From NCBI RefSeq assembly GCF_006345805.1, contig NC_042997.1, forward strand, positions 101,618,001 through 101,682,000: a stretch of 64,000 nucleotides of DNA, read 5' to 3'. The position numbers and the translations under genes were made by a program. Origin of the DNA: Octopus sinensis (Eukaryota). The notes beneath the pieces are model-generated. The model was not told the DNA's origin. It did no database searches and saw only the letters and a list, made by a program, of their open reading frames with translations. Position 1 is the stretch's first letter; every line of letters begins with the position of its first letter. Shown in pieces: positions 2,971-39,630 of this stretch.

Positions 2971-3083
2971 ATTATTATTATTATTATAATAATAATAATA
3001 ATATTTGGAGCTGTTCAGACTTATAAGATATAACATTTTTTATATCTGTTTTATAAAATTGATTTTTATTTTGTTTTTTCTAG

Positions 3084-3341
3084 TTTTAAAAGCTTGTCCA
3101 TCAAAAGAGGCCATAAGCCAAATTAATGGTCCTCTCACAACTGTATCAATGAATATTGCAAGCCAAACAGAGTTCCCAACAGCACAAAATAAATCAGATG
3201 AGAAAAAGAATTCCTGGGAGAGTACACCACAAAAATTATCTAACAGAACACAAAAAACAACCGAAGAGGAGCTTTGTAGAATATGTGGAGATCGTGCATC
3301 AGGTTATCACTACAATGCTCTCAGCTGTGAAGGATGTAAAG
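3084..3341 (+). CDS. EcR: NR1H exon: A/B region and first zinc finger ([22 protein letters not shown])
   Basis: Acceptor ttttttctag ends at 3083; donor gtatgt at 3342; 258 nt, phase 1-1; in-frame ATG at 3149 (MNIASQ). Confidence 0.9.
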
Positions 3342-3648
3342 GTATGTAACAGCTTCTATCACATTTCAGTATAATATCTTTGTTATGATATGACCATAGG
3401 ATGAAGTATTTTAGTTCATGTCCAAAAGAAGATGCCAAGCTGGGAGTTTAACCTTACTCTTTTACTTGTTTCAGTCATTTGACTGCAGCCATGCTGGAGC
3501 ACCGCCTTTAGTCGAGCAAATCGATCCCAGGACTTATTCTTTGTAAGCCTAGTATTTATTCTATCGGTCTCTTTTGCCAAACCACTAAGTTATGGGCATG
3601 CAAACACACCAGCATCGGTTGTCAAGCGATGTTTGAGGACAAACACAG

Positions 3649-14100: not shown

Positions 14101-17100
14101 TAATTATATTAGTAGATTGTATATATAAATAAACCAACAATAACTCCTCTGTACAGTTATTTGATCTGCCACTAATATTAGTCAAGTCTCCCTACTATCT
14201 TCTTAAAAAGAGACATATTTGATAATGTGGTCTTAAATGCAAAATAACTGAAAAACAGAGGCAGCCTTGGTATGGACATTTGCCTTGTCGGAAACAAAAA
14301 CTAAATTCATTCAAACACAGTCTACTACTGTCTTCTAAAAAAAATATACAAGACAGGTTGGTCATGGTCAGAACATATTTGATCATAAGTCTACACACTC
14401 AGAGCTTATTGTAACAAGATTACATAGTCATTTTCTGGAATGTCCTTGATTATAAGACTGCTTCATCAGGTTTGACCTCAACAACAATGGCATCAATAAA
14501 TTGATAATGTTAAAAAATTTCAACAAATCTTTTTTTATCGTATTATTCTCACAGGAAGCATCCAATGAAGTTACGACATTAAGAGCCTCCAGGTGTTATG
14601 ATTATAAAACAAAGACGATAGTTTTTATGACTGGAATACCTGTTACTAAAGAAAATTTAAAAGCTCTTGGTATCAGCAATTATGCAGAAGTTGCATTTAC
14701 TTTCTTCCAAAGTCTGGTAAACCTTTGTGTGGATAATGCTGAATATGCACTTCTCACAGCTATTTGCATTTTTTCAGGTGAGATATAATTCAACTATTTT
14801 ACATTTTTCCTGCATTACTGACTTTTCTAATAGCTTTCAAAACTTCAGAGTTGTACTTGTCCAAGTGAGCAAATACTACAAAATAAAAGCAAGTGGTTTT
14901 TACTAACTCATGAATATTAAATATTGTCTAGAGAAAAACGAATAAAGTACGTTGTCATGAATCCAGCATAAATCTAAACAAAATTAGTGTCATTTATTTC
15001 AAACATAAAAACAATTAGAAAAACCATATAATTTACTTCATGACTGCAGATATGTTAAAAGGCTGAATTCTTGAAATATATAAATATCATCCAAAAATGT
15101 GCAAGGCATATTTTTTTGAATACTATAAATACATTCATTGTGAATTAAACTTTGAAAAGAAGCATAAATTTCATGAATACAAATATTTTCAGCCCCTTGT
15201 TTTTCCCCTCTATGTGCGCACACACACACTTTTCAAAATAAATAAATAAATAAATAAACTTATAATTTCCTAGAAGCATGGTAAATTCTTCCTGAAATCT
15301 GAAAATATTTAAGAGTTGGTGCCTAACTCTGGTTTCATAGCAGGAAGTGAGTAAATGCCCCTTCATCTCACCCCTGCATCCTGGATGGCAATATCTATTC
15401 TATTGCCAACATTCAGACCAGTCTGAGTATAACTTTCCTTGCCATCTATCTCAGAAAACCTGCAATGATCATGGGCATTTCCCATGTATACTTTACTCTT
15501 GAATCAGCATTTTTAACTATTTAATATTCAGATTACTCTGTTGAATCTATTTATTGGGTCATCCCATAAATAATGCAGTTTTTTTCAATTGCATGAACTA
15601 AAAGTTGGAAGGGGGCAGGATAAACTACCTGCATCAACTTGCTATAAAAGCAGGTAGCAATTTTACCTTGTTCTTATTCTTAGAGAAAGTTTTGAAGAGT
15701 TCAGTTCGATTTTAACAGTTTTTTTTTTCAAAGCCATAGTGGAAGTGACAAAGGAGTATATTTGGCATATTTTACTTTATGAGTTCAATAAAAATAGCAC
15801 AATGGAAAGTGCAAGGAATATTAATGCAGTATATGGGGATTGGACAATAAGTGTCAACAGTGGTTCCAGAAATTCTGATCCGGAAACTACAGCCTAGAAG
15901 ATGAGCCTTGTCCTGGAAGATCTGTAGAGCTCAACGAGGGCATCCTACAAACCCTGGTGGAATGAAGCTTGGATTTGGTCATTCAACCATTCATCAACAC
16001 CTGCATGCCATCGGAAAAGTCAGCAAACTGGGTCAATGGGTTCCTCACAAACTAATTGCACGCAGAGAGTAAATGTGTGCTCTTCTTTGTTGTCATGTCT
16101 CATGAATGAAACTTTTTTGGACTGAATAGTGACTGATGATGAGAAATGAGTTCTCTATAAGAATGTCAAGTGCCAAAGACAGTGATTAGGGAAAGGAGAA
16201 ACACCAGCACCCTAGGCTAAAGAAGGTCTTCACCTATGTAAGGTGTTGTCTGTTTGATGGGAGATGAAAGGTTTAGTCCACTTTGAACATTTAAACCCAA
16301 ACCAAATGATAACTTAGGAGATCTACTGTGAGCAATTTGAGCAGTTTAAGTCAGTGCTAGAAGAAAAACAACCATCTTTGGTTTCAAGATGAAAGGTATT
16401 CTTCCACCAGGATAATGCTCAGCCACATACAGCGATGACATTCCAAAGGCTGGAGCAGTTTGAATGGGAAACAATGCCCTGCCCCCATATTCTCCAGACA
16501 TTGCCCCATTTGATTATCATTTATTCTGTAGTCTTCAAAATCATTTGGATGGAAAAATAGGAATTCTGTAAACAAAGTCAGAACAGTACTGGAGGAGTAT
16601 TTTTCATCACAGACAAGTGAATTTTGGAAGAGGGGCCTTGCAAGTCTATTAGATAGATGGAAGAGCATTGTAGAAAATGGAGAATGTAATTTAGATGAAA
16701 AAAGAACTTTGTTTATCTTAATTTTGAAAAATAGAAAAGTATGAAAAAAACGCATTATTTTGGGGATGACCCAATAGTTACAATTTTTTTAATTAGCCAT
16801 TCTTTATTTCATAGCTTTGAGATTTTGATGATGTGGTTGTTTATTTTTAGAATAACACTGTAGGGTAGGTGTAGGAGGCTGGATCTAACCAATTTGAACA
16901 TAGAATTGGTAGAATAATTTGGCAGGTATGGCCAATTTAAATGCTAAAAATTTAAGTAACTTAAAATATTTTGATTCCTTATAATAATAGAAGTTTTGTA
17001 GTTTACTGAATAAACTACAAGGTTTCTCTTCTAATGTTGTACACTCCAGAGTAAAGAGAGTTAAATGCTCTGAAGAACAATGTTTCAGGTACGTCAGATT

Positions 17101-29039: not shown

Positions 29040-29490
29040 ACATGTATATGTATATATATATATGGAATATGCTTGAGAAGACCTGTTGAGTCAAGTAAAA
29101 GCAATATCGTAGCTGTGGCCAGTTCCCTTTCACTAGCTCCTGTGCCGATAGCATGTAAAAAGACCATCCAAATGTGGTCAATGCTAGGTCCATCTGAACA
29201 TGGCCAATGCCAGTACCCCCTGACTGGCCCCCATGCCAGTGATTCATAAAAAGCACTATCCAAACGTGATCAATGTCAGGCCTGCCTGACTGGTTCCTGT
29301 GCCAGTGGTATGTAAAAAGCACCCATTACACTCTCAGAGTGGTTGGCATTAGGAAGAACATCTAGCAGTAGAAACATTGCCAGATCAGATTGGAGCCTGG
29401 TGCAGCTGCTGGCTCTCCAGACCTCAATCAAACCATCCAAACCATGCCAGCATGGAAAATGGATGCCAAACTATGATGGTGATGATGTGT
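29040..29490 (+). mobile_element. RTE-type 3' UTR with tandem subunits
   Basis: Homologous to 7640-8105. Confidence 0.7.
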
Positions 29491-30105
29491 GTGTGTGCAT
29501 TTACGTATTTATATGTATGGATATATAGATGCTCATGTGCATAAATACATATATGTGTGTGTGTGTATCAATCATCTTCATCATTTTATCTGTAGTTCAC
29601 CATGCAAGCATGGGTCAGATGAGGTTATGTTGAAGAAAAATTTTCTACAGCTGGATGCCAAACACCCAACTCTTTCCAAGCAAGGAAATAATACATTAAT
29701 CAATCAAACAGTGAATATCTTTACATGCTATGGTGAAGAATGCAAACAAACTATACCATTTGTATGAACAGTGAAGTTTTGGTTCCATTATTTAACACAC
29801 ACACATGCACATATACATACACTGATATATATATTACATTCATATATATATAAACATCAAGATGCGAAGCCACCAGTGAGCATTAAGAGTCATGAGTATC
29901 AAAATGTGAAATCATTGATGATCTGGCTCTATCTGTTGCTTTCTTTGTCAGTCATTAAGATAGTGCTTCTATGGCTATTGAGTGGTTTTTGACTCTTATT
30001 TCTACTGCTTGTCAGTGCCATTTGTCACTATAGTGCCATATATATTTCTACCTTTAGGTTGTAAAAATTGCAAATTAGCCGACCATATTATTTATAACAT
30101 TCATG

Positions 30106-30140
<35 letters not shown>

Positions 30141-30336
30141 ATTTGTGTATATATATATATATATATATAAAATTTGACGCTGCTTACCAAAAACCATCAC
30201 ATATATATATATATATGTGTGTGTGATGGCTTTTGGTAAGCAGCATCAAATTTTACAATTCTGTAAATGATAATAATAATACTTTATAAGCGATCACCAT
30301 GTAATGACTAAAGAAAATAGTCTAATAATAATAATA

Positions 30337-30367
<31 letters not shown>

Positions 30368-30599
30368 ATAATATATATATATATATGTTTTTAACAATAA
30401 TTGGCAGAAGTTACAGAGTGACTCAAGGAATGAGAGTTTCATGCATTAGCACAACCAAACATTAATAAAACACATATATACACTCATGTTTTGAGTTCTA
30501 TTTTGCCTGTTTGAATCACAAGCTAAGTAAAATCGCGGCCATCTGTGCATTCAGGCATGCCCTCTACGCCTCTCTCTTAGTTGAGAGGTTCCTAGTTTT

Positions 30600-31190
30600 A
30601 CAGGCCTGTTGGATGTTGTTGCCATGTAAAAGCACCCATGCCAGTGTCACATAAATGTGTCAATACCAGTGCCTCATAAAAGAAACTATGCCAGTGTCGG
30701 TGCTATGTTAAAGCCACCCGGTACACTTCGTAAAGAGGTTGGTGTTAGAAAAACCATCCAGCTGTGAAAATCATGCCAAAACAGACAAAATGAAACCCAG
30801 GCAGCTCTCCAGATAACCAGCTTCTGTCAAACCATCCAGCCTATACCAGCATGGAGAACAGATGTTAAATGATGATGATGATGATATATATATATATATC
30901 ATCATCATCATCATCATCGTTTAACGTCCGCATCATTGTTTAACATCTGTTTTCCATGCTGGCATGGGCTGGACGGTTGGTCTGGGAACCCAGGAAGTTG
31001 CACCAGGCTCCAGTCTGATCTGGCAATGTTTCTACAGCTAGCTTCCCTTCCTAATGCCAACCACTCTGAGAGTGTAGTGGGTGCTTTTTACATGCCACCA
31101 ACACAGGAGCTATAGGGGATTGGCAACAACCACGATTGGTTGGTGCTTTTTACGTACCACCAGCGCAGGGGACAGTCAAGGTGGCAATAT
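30600..31190. mobile_element. Two RTE-type 3' ends, tail-to-tail (+ 30600-30885, - 30895-31190)
   Basis: (GAT)n and (CAT)n tails face each other across a short (TA)n. Confidence 0.7.
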
Positions 31191-31194
31191 ATAT

Positions 31195-31580
31195 ATACAG
31201 GTGCAGGCGTGGCTGTGTGGTAAGAAGCTTGCTTCCTAACTACATAGTTCTGGGTTCATTCCTACTGCATGGCACCTTGGGCAAGTGTCTTCTACTATAG
31301 CCTCAGGCTGGCTAAAGCCTCCTGCATGGATTTGGTAGATGGAAACTGAAAGAAACCCATTGTATGTATATATATGAGTGTGTGTGTATGTCTTTGTGAG
31401 TCTGTGTTTGCCCCCCCCCCACTCCATGACTGCTTGACAACTGGTGGTGGTGTGTTTTCATCCCCAAAATTTAGTGGTTCAGCAAAAGAGACTGGTAGAA
31501 TAAGTACTAAGCTTAAAAAGATAAGCGTTAGGGTTAAATTGTTTGTCTTAAACCCTTCAAGGTGATGCTACAGTCAAATA
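31195..31580 (+). mobile_element. SINE family B, 3' end cut off by the GC-rich island
   Basis: Head ggtgcaggcgtggctgtgtggtaagaagcttgc; tail stops at acagtcaaat. Confidence 0.8.
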
Positions 31581-31768
31581 ACCAATCGGCCGGTTCAGGG
31601 GCGGCGAATCCGCGCCCGTCCCTTCTGGTCACGACGATACGGTCGGCCTTCCACATTGGTCGCGGCGCAAATATTAGACTGAGACCAACGCGTACGGGCC
31701 ATCGCAGCAGCCGCCACGCCTTCCGCGCACGGGTCCTAGGCGTGCGGCGGCTTCACGCCCTTCGATTT
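31581..31768. other. CpG-rich (~65% GC) island of unknown origin
   Basis: Hand count 124 G+C in 31581-31770 and about 28 CpG; single copy in the window; no convincing ORF. Confidence 0.8.
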
Positions 31769-31924
31769 GAGTGGTTGGCGTTAGGAAGGGCATCCAGCCG
31801 TAGAAACACTGCCAGATCAGACTGGGCCTGATGCAGCCTTCTGGCTTCACAGACCCCAGTTGAACCATCCAACCCATGCTAGCATGGAAAACGGACGCTA
31901 AATGATGATGATGATGATGATGAT
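31769..31924 (+). mobile_element. Young RTE-type 3' tail with (ATG)n
   Basis: gagtggttggcgttaggaagggcatccagccgtag...aacggacgctaa(atg)n; CpGs retained. Confidence 0.8.
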
Positions 31925-32133
31925 AGTTAATCCAAACATGAAAGCACAAAAGAAAAACAACAACGCGAGGACGTGTAACAAATATAGTATTATTGTACAC
32001 TCAGGAAAGAAGGAGGGTTTAACGTTTCGAGCGGAGCTCTTCATCGGAAACATAGGAGAAGGAAAGGTCCAGAGAAGGGAAGACAGAAGAAAAAAATCGC
32101 CGACAGTACACACGCGGTCACATTTTGAATGAC

Positions 32134-32137
<4 letters not shown>
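31925..32137 (-). mobile_element. Penelope-type terminal-repeat-like fragment carrying a hammerhead-like motif
   Basis: Minus strand gttt-ccgatga-a-gagc-tcc-gctc-gaaac-gtt-aaac (32017-32051); related decayed motif next to the Penelope RT relic at 48354-48386. Confidence 0.55.
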
Positions 32138-32172
<35 letters not shown>

Positions 32173-32389
32173 CACTATATAAAGCAGACTATCAGATGTT
32201 GTTATACACAGCTAGTCACAATGTTATTCAATTTTGTTGCAGCTTTCAGATTATGCCACACTATTGGCCAGGCAGGTAGGCCAACATTTTCTTGATCAGA
32301 ATGATAGTCCATCATGTGTTTTGTTCACAATGCTCTACTGATCTGAAACCACTAGATCCTGTATGTATATATATATATTTATATATATG

Positions 32390-39022: not shown

Positions 39023-39469
39023 ATATATATATATATATACACACACACATATATATATATGTGATGATTCAAGGATTGCTTTAGCATTAATATATACCAA
39101 CTAACAACCAAGATCAGATGAGTTTAATTTAGCTTTTTAATGCACATTTCATTTCACACTCTATTCCTCCCTTACACCAACAACTTACTCAACCATCCAC
39201 CTCCCCCACTACATTCATTATTTTCCCTTCCACTTCCATCGACTGCCATGCCTCAGGGATTCTAGGATAGCTGGTTCACTGCCCAACCATTCATACTGCC
39301 ATTCATTGAAATATCGTCACATTGTCTGCACAATTGAAGAAAATTATTATATTATGCTATTTTTTGGACAAAGATTATTTTTGCAAGTTTGCAAAATGAT
39401 ATTTTTCTAAATTATATAAATTAATCTGTGTGTGTGTGTGTGTGCATGCAACTTTGTCACTCATCATCA

Positions 39470-39630
39470 TCCTCATCATCATCATCGTTTAACGTCTGTT
39501 TTCCATGCTAGCATGGATTGGACAGTTTGACCGGGGTCTGGGAAGCCAGGAGGCTGCACCAGGCTCCAGTCTGATCTGGTAGTGTTTCTACAGCTGGATG
39601 CTTTTCCTAACGCCAACCACTCCGTCTGCT
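39470..39630 (-). mobile_element. RTE-type 3' tail
   Basis: (cat)n cgtttaacgtctgttttccatgctagcatg...cctaacgccaaccactc. Confidence 0.75.

What the first reader, a model, noticed from the sequence alone, without database searches (positions are those of the whole stretch)
31581..31924. Foreign-looking CpG-rich structured island fused to a young LINE tail
Seen: ~190 bp at ~65% GC with ~28 CpG in an otherwise AT-rich, CpG-poor window. It is wedged exactly between a truncated SINE-B 3' end and an RTE-type tail that also keeps its CpGs. It is self-complementary: agccgc-cacgcc pairs with ggcgtg-(cg)-gcggct (12-bp stem with a bulge), aggggcg with cgccctt (possible closing stem), cattggtc with gaccaacg, and cgac with gtcg. 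There is no credible ORF in six frames and no clear TSD. Inference: options are (a) a template-switch chimera of a structured cellular RNA (rRNA spacer/expansion segment or unknown ncRNA) with a LINE 3' end, analogous to U6-L1 chimeras; (b) the head of an undescribed young retroposon; (c) horizontally acquired or contaminant DNA, or an assembly artefact.
Basis: partly seen in the sequence, partly recalled or inferred. Interest (0 to 1): 0.72.

Follow-up and report, generated by a model that had tools for sequence, protein, structure and literature searches.

The report
18S rRNA fragment fused to retroposon tail
The odd GC-rich, CpG-rich island is a decaying 183-base copy of part of an octopus-type 18S ribosomal RNA, joined head-to-tail to the common 3' tail of a local SINE/LINE repeat, so it is most likely a dead chimeric retrocopy and not foreign DNA or a new gene.

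Summary
Window 31581-31768 is 65% GC with 28 CpG (observed/expected 1.40), against 33% GC and 0.28 for the whole window.

The source of the island is now identified. Window 31586-31768 aligns without gaps, at 93.4% identity (E 6e-76), to nucleotides 295-477 of a complete 2645-nt eukaryotic 18S rRNA. That rRNA lies on two public read assemblies (Logan SRR9105617 and SRR9105615). The segment is the expanded V2 region and ends just before the conserved UGGUGACUCUGGAUAAC. Published Octopus vulgaris 18S primers and probe match that contig exactly.

Seven of the 12 differences are CpG losses in the window copy, and there are no CpG gains. It is therefore an ageing pseudogene fragment, not a misassembled rDNA read.

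It is joined directly, on the same strand, to a 156-bp tail module ending in (ATG)n. That module has at least 8 copies in the window. The two parts show similar private divergence (about 5-7%).

The best reading is one retroposition event in which a tail-bearing RNA and 18S rRNA were copied together, by template switch or RNA ligation.

Copy number in the genome could not be tested.

The parts
31200..31585 (+). Older SINE copy that carries the insertion. It is almost fully CpG-decayed and lacks the last ~20 bp of the family's A-rich 3' end.
   Evidence: Aligns to 7 other SINE copies in the window up to about 31583-31585. 31190-31585 has 2 CpG, observed/expected 0.11. The 5' limit was read from the sequence and is approximate.
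31572..31585 (+). Candidate 5' copy of a target-site duplication (AGTCAAATAACCAA). Weak.
   Evidence: Local alignment to the post-tail flank gives only TAA-CCAA/TAATCCAA. 1857 of 2000 shuffles score as well.
31586..31768 (+). 18S rRNA-derived segment. It is a copy of nt 295-477 of an octopus-type 18S rRNA (expanded V2 region, Rfam SSU model positions ~190-243), in sense orientation.
   Evidence: Exhaustive protein-level search gave a single hit, P0001, E 7.8e-24. P0001 lies on Logan contigs L001/L002. L001 1626-4270 is a complete SSU_rRNA_eukarya, 1339 bits. blastn matches window 31586-31768 to L001 1920-2102, ungapped, 93.4% identity, E 6e-76.
31709..31751 (+). GGCGTGCGGCGGCT). It lies in a stretch that is inserted relative to the Rfam 18S consensus, so it is probably an expansion-segment helix of the source rRNA.
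   Evidence: Window copy: -28 kcal/mol, z -2.27. Same stretch of the rRNA contig: -33.1 kcal/mol, z -2.04. It falls in an insertion relative to model positions 225-227.
31769..31924 (+). Tail module of an abundant SINE/LINE family (GAGTGGTTGGCGTTAGGAAGGGCATCCAGC...), ending in an (ATG)n microsatellite at 31902-31924.
   Evidence: At least 8 copies in the window at 70-85% identity, all with homology starting at 31769. The core motif is shared by several families. Ten diagnostic positions are shared with the copy at 39441-39622 (-), which starts at the same base.
31925..31935 (+). Candidate 3' copy of the target-site duplication (AGTTAATCCAA). Weak.
   Evidence: Not significant against shuffles or against other window pairs at the same spacing (462 of 623 as good).
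31936..31960 (+). Possible remainder of the interrupted SINE's A-rich 3' end (ACATGAAAGCACAAAAGAAAAAC).
   Evidence: The joined flanks align to the SINE consensus through its end. The terminal match alone is not significant (677 of 2000 shuffles as good).

Best explanation
The 339-bp block 31586-31924 is a chimeric retrocopy. It consists of 183 nt of the animal's own 18S ribosomal RNA (nt 295-477, the GC- and CpG-rich expanded V2 region) joined directly, in sense orientation, to the 156-nt 3' tail module of a SINE/LINE family that ends in (ATG)n.

Proposed mechanism (inferred):
1. The reverse transcriptase of the LINE that recognises this tail started target-primed reverse transcription on a tail-bearing RNA, at a nick in the A-rich end of an older SINE.
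2. It copied the tail up to GAGTGG. This may be the 5' end of that subfamily's RNA, because the only other member of the subfamily in the window starts at the same base.
3. It then continued on 18S rRNA. Either it switched template, or the two RNAs had been ligated beforehand.
4. It stopped after 183 nt inside a very GC-rich helix region.

The product was dead on arrival. It has since drifted by about 5-7% and lost 7 of its 35 CpG. It looks like a CpG island only because the source rRNA segment has one CpG about every 5 bases.

Shown:
- The identity of the island with 18S rRNA.
- The repeat nature and sharp 5' limit of the tail.
- Same strand and a direct junction.
- Similar private divergence of both parts.

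Inferred:
- A single retroposition event.
- The template switch or ligation.
- The RTE-clade enzyme.
- That the rRNA is the host's own.
For: -: the frame crossing the island hits one protein out of 1.84 billion (P0001, E 7.8e-24), matching exactly window 31583-31768.
- P0001 is a spurious ORF inside a complete 18S rRNA (Rfam 1339 bits, model 1-1831), on contigs that also carry GC-rich 5' spacer.
- 183-bp ungapped match at 93.4%. It starts at 31586 and ends at 31768, precisely the limits set independently by the SINE and tail homologies. No other part of the rDNA contig matches the window.
- 7 of 12 differences are CpG to CpA/TpG in the window copy and none go the other way (35 CpG down to 28), so the copy decayed in place.
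- the O. vulgaris 18S primers and probe from PMC9115989 all match the contig exactly and in the right order, so the rRNA is octopus-type.
- the tail has 9 private differences in 140 columns, against 12 in 183 for the rRNA part (Fisher p = 1.0), consistent with one age. The tail also shares 10 diagnostic positions with copy 39441-39622 (-), which begins at the same GAGTGG.
- precedent. 18 sense-oriented 28S rRNA/LINE-1 chimeras in primates, with segments of 50-482 nt, attributed to template switching or RNA ligation.
- the active octopus RTE LINE has a microsatellite 3' end, as this tail does.
Against: - The target-site duplication and the continuation of the SINE after the insert are not statistically supported. 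A single insertion event is therefore inferred mainly from the exact junctions and the equal divergence.
- There is no microhomology at the rRNA/tail junction.
- The LINE partner was not found in the window, so 'RTE-type' is unverified.
- The organism of the SRA runs is not given by any tool. If it is a different species, some of the 12 differences are between-species rRNA variation and the dating is off.
- Genome-wide copy number is unknown. The collections that could be searched hold no octopus repeat DNA, and the window's own ORFs are not on record.
- CpG sites decayed only about 2.3 times faster than other sites. A second CpG-retaining patch lies 35 bp downstream, so some local protection from methylation may also contribute.
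Confidence: 0.75

Rival explanations
1. The block is one copy of an amplifying, non-autonomous retroposon family whose body was recruited from 18S rRNA. It would be an rRNA-derived, SINE-like family that uses the shared tail to borrow the LINE enzyme, analogous to 28S- or 5S-derived SINEs.
For: - Tail modules in this genome are combined with several unrelated 5' parts.
- Mollusc SINEs are known to swap modules by template switching (PMC4758252).
- O. vulgaris has about 900 families of young, mostly unclassified SINEs (PMC13282606).
- The tail subfamily starts at GAGTGG in both of its window copies.
Against: - No second copy of the rRNA-derived part in 64 kb.
- No tRNA, 5S, 7SL or snRNA-like head and no Rfam hit. 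The segment is an internal piece of 18S with no known internal promoter.
- The differences from the rRNA are mostly simple CpG decay, as expected for direct derivation from rRNA, not descent through a diverged master copy.
Confidence: 0.13
2. Two-step or DNA-level origin. A 5'-truncated tail copy was already in the SINE, and a fragment of rDNA, or rRNA-derived cDNA, was later captured at a double-strand break exactly at its 5' edge. Alternatively it came in as filler at the 5' junction without a true template switch.
For: - There is no significant target-site duplication around the whole block.
- There is no microhomology at the junction.
- 5' junctions of LINE insertions are known to pick up extra sequence (general knowledge).
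Against: - Same orientation and a base-exact junction at the recurrent tail start.
- The two parts have indistinguishable private divergence.
- Later capture exactly at the edge of the tail would be a coincidence.
Confidence: 0.08
3. Assembly artefact, contaminant or horizontally acquired DNA.
For: rDNA reads are very abundant and can create chimeric joins. The composition is alien to the rest of the window.
Against: - The segment differs from the rRNA by directional CpG decay plus 5 other changes. It is not a fresh rDNA read.
- No vector, plasmid or phage match. An exact 27-mer scan of bacterial and archaeal genomes found nothing.
- Both junctions coincide with natural repeat boundaries.
Confidence: 0.02

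Closest known systems
[quoted passage not shown]
   Same: An internal fragment of a large ribosomal RNA lies at the 5' side of a LINE-type 3' end, in sense orientation and directly joined. Fragment size is in the same range (50-482 nt, median 269; here 183 nt). Template switching or RNA ligation during target-primed reverse transcription is the proposed cause.
   Different: Here the rRNA is 18S, which that survey does not mention (0 occurrences). The host is a cephalopod. The 3' partner is a sequence-specific tail module ending in (ATG)n, not an L1 3' end with poly(A). The partner may be a SINE-like RNA and not the LINE itself.
U6/L1 and other small-RNA/L1 chimeric retrogenes (Buzdin et al. 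2003, as cited in PMC4758252; details from general knowledge)
   Same: Bipartite structure: a cellular non-coding RNA at the 5' side and a 5'-truncated retroelement at the 3' side, made in one retroposition event.
   Different: U6 is usually full length and joined at variable L1 positions. Here an internal rRNA piece is joined at a recurrent position, the start of the tail module. Flanking duplications, clear in U6/L1 chimeras, are not demonstrable here.
rRNA-derived SINE families (5S-derived SINEs; 28S-derived SINE, listed) and module-swapping 'jigsaw' SINEs of molluscs (PMC4758252)
   Same: An rRNA-derived 5' part combined with a LINE-derived tail. Module exchange through template switching is the accepted origin.
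   Different: Those are multi-copy families with a working promoter. Here only one copy is seen, no promoter-like head was found, and amplification is untested.
Dispersed rRNA pseudogene fragments (the sort of sequence RepeatMasker labels SSU-rRNA; general knowledge)
   Same: A non-functional, decaying copy of rRNA sequence outside the rDNA array.
   Different: This one consists mostly of a lineage-specific expansion segment, so Rfam's 18S model does not detect it in the window. It is physically fused to a retroposon tail, which points to how it got there.

Membership tests
Eukaryotic 18S (SSU) rRNA-derived sequence | Significant nucleotide similarity to a bona fide, complete 18S rRNA gene | tested here: met
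   183-bp ungapped match, 93.4% identity, E 6e-76, to L001 1920-2102. This lies inside an SSU_rRNA_eukarya hit of 1339 bits covering model positions 1-1831.
Eukaryotic 18S (SSU) rRNA-derived sequence | The fragment itself is recognised by the Rfam SSU covariance model | tested here: not met
   No SSU hit at E<=10 on window 31300-32200. This is expected: only about 25 nt (GCGCAAATATTAGACTGAGACC) belong to the conserved core and the rest is expansion sequence.
Eukaryotic 18S (SSU) rRNA-derived sequence | The source rRNA belongs to the host lineage (octopus) | tested here: inconclusive
   Published O. vulgaris 18S forward primer, reverse primer and probe all match L001 exactly and in order. The organism of runs SRR9105615/17 could not be retrieved.
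LINE-mediated chimeric retrocopy (template-switch or ligation chimera) | The 3' part is the 3' end of a retroelement, including its terminal repeat | tested here: met
   31769-31924 matches at least 8 window copies and ends in (ATG)n.
LINE-mediated chimeric retrocopy (template-switch or ligation chimera) | The 5' part is a copy of an unrelated cellular RNA, on the same strand, joined with no intervening sequence | tested here: met
   rRNA homology ends at 31768 and tail homology starts at 31769, both on the + strand.
LINE-mediated chimeric retrocopy (template-switch or ligation chimera) | The whole bipartite unit is flanked by one target-site duplication | tested here: inconclusive
   The candidate 11-14-bp imperfect duplication is no better than shuffles in A-rich flanks.
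LINE-mediated chimeric retrocopy (template-switch or ligation chimera) | Both parts have the same age | tested here: met
   Private divergence is 9/140 for the tail and 12/183 for the rRNA part, Fisher p = 1.0. JC distance is about 0.05-0.07.
LINE-mediated chimeric retrocopy (template-switch or ligation chimera) | One-off product, not an amplifying family | not testable with these tools
   No octopus genome is searchable. The metagenome collection lacks even the abundant tail motif. Only the window could be checked, and it holds no second copy.
RTE-clade LINE 3' tail | Sequence identity with the 3' end of an autonomous RTE LINE encoding endonuclease and reverse transcriptase | not testable with these tools
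   No LINE carrying this tail is present in the window. No repeat library is available.
RTE-clade LINE 3' tail | Microsatellite 3' terminus instead of poly(A) | tested here: met
   (ATG)n at 31902-31924 and in the other copies. Microsatellite 3' ends are reported for octopus RTE-2_OV and for RTE elements generally.
SINE (pol III-transcribed short retroposon) | Head derived from tRNA, 5S, 7SL or snRNA with an internal promoter | tested here: not met
   ARAGORN finds no tRNA in the window. There is no Rfam match to any such RNA at E<=10. The 5' part is an internal piece of 18S rRNA.
SINE (pol III-transcribed short retroposon) | Many dispersed copies | tested here: inconclusive
   No other copy in the 64-kb window. 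The genome could not be searched.

The most novel reading that the evidence does not exclude
The block is a member, or the founder, of an amplifying retroposon family whose body comes from an 18S rRNA expansion segment and which rides on the shared (ATG)n tail. That would be the first 18S-derived SINE-like family. It would also catch a stringent-type (tail-recognising) LINE system in a cephalopod recruiting new modules from ribosomal RNA.
Probability: 0.12. Interest if true: 0.55.

Novelty: new member of a known kind. Interest (0 to 1): 0.33.

Why it matters
It removes an apparent anomaly. A 'foreign' CpG island in an AT-rich octopus region turns out to be ordinary host rRNA sequence moved by retroposition.

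It is also a clean example outside mammals of a ribosomal-RNA/retroelement chimera, involving 18S rRNA and a tail-specific (probably RTE-type) system where the known cases involve L1. This is the kind of event thought to seed new SINE modules in molluscs.

On the practical side, lineage-specific rRNA expansion segments escape both Rfam and generic repeat libraries. Fragments like this will stay unannotated, or be mistaken for CpG islands or contamination, unless the species' own rDNA is added to the masking library.

Tried and rejected
- Rfam scan of 31300-32200 at E<=10. Only chance-level hits appeared: a 31-nt plant-virus pseudoknot model at the junction on the minus strand (24.8 bits, below its cut-off of 34), and microRNA models on (TA)n.
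- ARAGORN on the whole window: no tRNA.
- blastn against plasmids and phages: only chance-level 24-52-nt GC-rich matches or none. Vector or bacterial origin rejected.
- Six-frame concatenated protein query against the word-indexed database: nothing. The search hit its 8000-candidate ceiling and missed the true relative later found by the exhaustive search, so that negative was uninformative.
- Exact-pattern scans of metagenome and bacterial genome collections with island 27-mers: nothing. A control scan with the abundant tail motif also found nothing, so the metagenome collection holds no octopus DNA and says nothing about copy number.
- Searches with P0001 and its cluster listing: no further rDNA variants.
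- Exact look-ups of window ORFs: not on record, so there is no independent assembly of the junctions.
- Literature search for the SRA run numbers: nothing.
- The idea that the island is the C-terminal coding part of a LINE, because an 89-codon frame runs in phase into the tail: rejected. The frame is a by-product of GC-rich rRNA.
- The idea that the island is a protected promoter-type CpG island: not needed, since the source has 35 CpG in 183 nt. Some local protection is not excluded.
- Target-site duplication and SINE continuity: tested and not significant.
- Downstream CpG patch 31961-32136: two-frame protein search empty, no rDNA match.

Full report
**1. The observation**

Window 31581-31768 is 188 bp at 65.4% GC with 28 CpG (observed/expected 1.40). 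The window as a whole is 32.6% GC with observed/expected 0.28. No other 200-bp window comes close (sequence).

The island sits between two repeats.
- Upstream is a SINE whose similarity to seven other window copies ends at about 31583-31585. That is about 20 bp short of the family's A-rich end.
- Downstream is a 156-bp module (31769-31924) ending in (ATG)n. It has at least eight copies in the window, and in every one the similarity begins at the same base, GAGTGGTTGG.

The stretch in between has no second copy in the window. A transition-tolerant Smith-Waterman search scored 47.5, against 42.5-61.5 for shuffled queries.

The main hairpin (31709-31751) is modestly better than shuffles (z -2.3, 2 of 200). 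The island as a whole folds no better than its composition predicts (z -1.66 on +, +0.25 on -).

**2. First round of identification, all negative**

- No Rfam family beyond chance-level hits.
- No tRNA.
- No plasmid or phage similarity beyond chance.
- No hit for a six-frame protein query in the word-indexed database.
- No exact match in the metagenome or bacterial genome collections.

A control scan with the very abundant tail motif also found nothing in the metagenome collection. That collection therefore holds no octopus DNA, and its silence means nothing.

**3. The decisive result**

One reading frame is open across the whole island and runs in phase into the tail. I used it as a handle for the exhaustive HMMER search of 1.84 billion representative proteins. 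It returned exactly one hit: P0001, 107 aa, E 7.8e-24, 89% identity. The hit matches query residues 7-68, that is window 31583-31768.

P0001 is a gene call on Logan assemblies of runs SRR9105617 (L001, 4347 bp) and SRR9105615 (L002, 3488 bp). Rfam shows that L001 1626-4270 is a complete eukaryotic small-subunit rRNA (1339 bits, model 1-1831). At 2645 nt it carries large GC-rich expansions, and it is preceded by 1.6 kb of 60-71% GC spacer.

At the DNA level, window 31586-31768 aligns to L001 1920-2102 without a single gap, 171 of 183 identical, E 6e-76. Nothing else in the rDNA contig matches the window. These limits are the same ones set independently by the SINE and tail homologies.

The segment is 18S nt 295-477. 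In the Rfam alignment it runs from inside a large insertion after model position ~190, through the conserved GCAAAUAUUAGAC core. So the island is the expanded V2 region of 18S rRNA. The 'protein' P0001 and the open frame are artefacts of GC-rich RNA.

**4. Whose rRNA is it?**

No tool gives the organism of the two runs, and the literature search for the run numbers was empty. However, the O. vulgaris 18S qPCR forward primer, reverse primer and probe published in PMC9115989 all match L001 exactly, in the right order and orientation (3205+, 3278+, 3346-).

An ungapped 93% match in a fast-evolving expansion segment also argues for the same species or a close relative. The window itself looks like octopus DNA on my reading of its repeats, which is from general knowledge. 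It also carries nuclear-receptor exons. I therefore take the source to be the host's own rRNA, as an inference.

**5. State of the copy**

Of the 12 differences, seven are CpG losses in the window copy: six CG to CA and one CG to TG. None is a gain. The rRNA has 35 CpG in this stretch and the copy has 28.

That directionality shows the copy has been decaying in place. This rules out a misassembled rDNA read or recent contamination. It also explains the 'island': the source has about one CpG every five bases, and 80% of them survive.

Divergence is JC 0.069 overall and 0.046 at non-CpG sites. With the calibration used for O. vulgaris repeats (JC 0.065 about 18 My, 0.09 about 25 My; PMC13282606), this gives an upper estimate of roughly 12-19 My. 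So the insertion is not very young.

**6. The tail**

The tail is 89% identical to the crude window consensus, like the other copies (88-91%), and keeps 4 CpG, as several others do. 'Young tail' is therefore not supported.

It shares ten diagnostic positions with the copy at 39441-39622 (minus strand). That copy is the only other window copy that also begins at GAGTGG with unrelated upstream sequence.

After allowing for this subfamily, the tail has 9 private differences in 140 columns, against 12 in 183 for the rRNA part (Fisher p = 1.0). The two parts look equally old.

The core GTTAGGAAGGGCATCCAGC occurs behind several different upstream sequences, so the module is used in a modular way. 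The (ATG)n end fits what is reported for octopus RTE elements. No autonomous LINE with this tail is in the window, so 'RTE-type' remains unverified.

**7. Mechanism**

The following all fit a bipartite retrocopy made in one target-primed reverse transcription event:
- an internal, sense-oriented rRNA fragment;
- direct joining to the start of a retroposon tail;
- equal age of the two parts;
- location inside an older, heavily decayed SINE (2 CpG left, observed/expected 0.11).

In this model the enzyme copies the tail-bearing RNA and then continues on 18S rRNA, either after a template switch or because the two RNAs had been ligated. The same two mechanisms are proposed for the 18 sense-oriented 28S rRNA/LINE-1 chimeras recently catalogued in primates (segments 50-482 nt). 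Template switching is also the accepted route of module exchange in mollusc SINEs.

Weak points:
- The candidate target-site duplication (AGTCAAATAACCAA / AGTTAATCCAA) and the apparent continuation of the SINE's A-rich end after the insert are not better than chance in such A-rich sequence.
- There is no microhomology at the junction.

**8. Rivals**

- An amplifying 18S-derived SINE-like family cannot be excluded without the genome. It has no positive support: no promoter-type head, no second copy, and differences that look like direct decay from rRNA.
- Two-step or DNA-level capture is possible. It needs a coincidence of position and age.
- Artefact, contaminant or horizontal transfer is rejected by the decay pattern and the negative vector and bacterial searches.

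**9. Verdict**

The finding is a new member of a known kind: an rRNA/retroelement chimera, here 18S with a microsatellite-tailed module in a cephalopod. Interest is modest. It would rise if genome searches showed a family.

Noticed in passing
window 31961-32136: A second CpG-retaining patch right after the insertion: 176 bp, 45.5% GC, 12 CpG, observed/expected 1.39. It is unique in the window, has no match to the rDNA contig and no protein-level relative. It could be another young insert, or a sign of local protection from methylation.
   Followed up: partly
window 39441-39622 (minus strand): A tail copy of the same subfamily as the finding's tail (10 shared diagnostic positions). It begins at exactly the same base, GAGTGG, behind unrelated AT-rich sequence. 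This suggests either a short source RNA starting there or a recurrent stop or switch point of the reverse transcriptase.
   Followed up: partly
window 31586-31768: CpG losses are strand-asymmetric: six G-to-A against one C-to-T on the + strand. The two-sided binomial p is about 0.13, so this may be chance. Editing of first-strand cDNA or transcription-linked bias were not examined.
   Followed up: no
window 31594 and 31597: Two transversions 3 nt apart turn the rRNA's GGATCTGG into GGTTCAGG. This could be a variant of the source rRNA and not post-insertion change. It creates a partial B-box-like GGTTC, probably by coincidence.
   Followed up: no
window 3005-3349 and 14501-14788 (+ strand): Exons of a nuclear hormone receptor gene: a C4 zinc finger (Pfam zf-C4, E 5e-10) and a weak ligand-binding-domain match (E 1.3e-3, below the Pfam cut-off). 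Whether the insertion at 31.6 kb lies in an intron or downstream of this gene was not determined.
   Followed up: partly
window 29337-31924: A cluster of at least four tail-module copies within 2.6 kb: 29337-29487 (+), 30734-30885 (+), 30931-31066 (-) and 31769-31924 (+). Two of them face each other.
   Followed up: no
window 7942, 26316, 26994, 28834, 44986 (-), 63709 (-): The core GTTAGGAAGGGCATCCAGC(Y)GTAGAAA recurs with up to 5 mismatches behind quite different upstream sequences. It behaves like a conserved module shared by several repeat families.
   Followed up: partly
L001 1626-4270: The 18S rRNA on the Logan contig is 2645 nt long, against an 1831-position Rfam model. It has several GC-rich expansions of up to 82% GC. 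Gene callers turn these into spurious ORFs such as P0001.
   Followed up: partly
tool behaviour: The word-indexed protein search with a 477-aa six-frame query reached its 8000-candidate ceiling and missed a relative with 89% identity over 62 aa. The exhaustive search later found it. Negatives from that tool with low-complexity queries are weak.
   Followed up: yes
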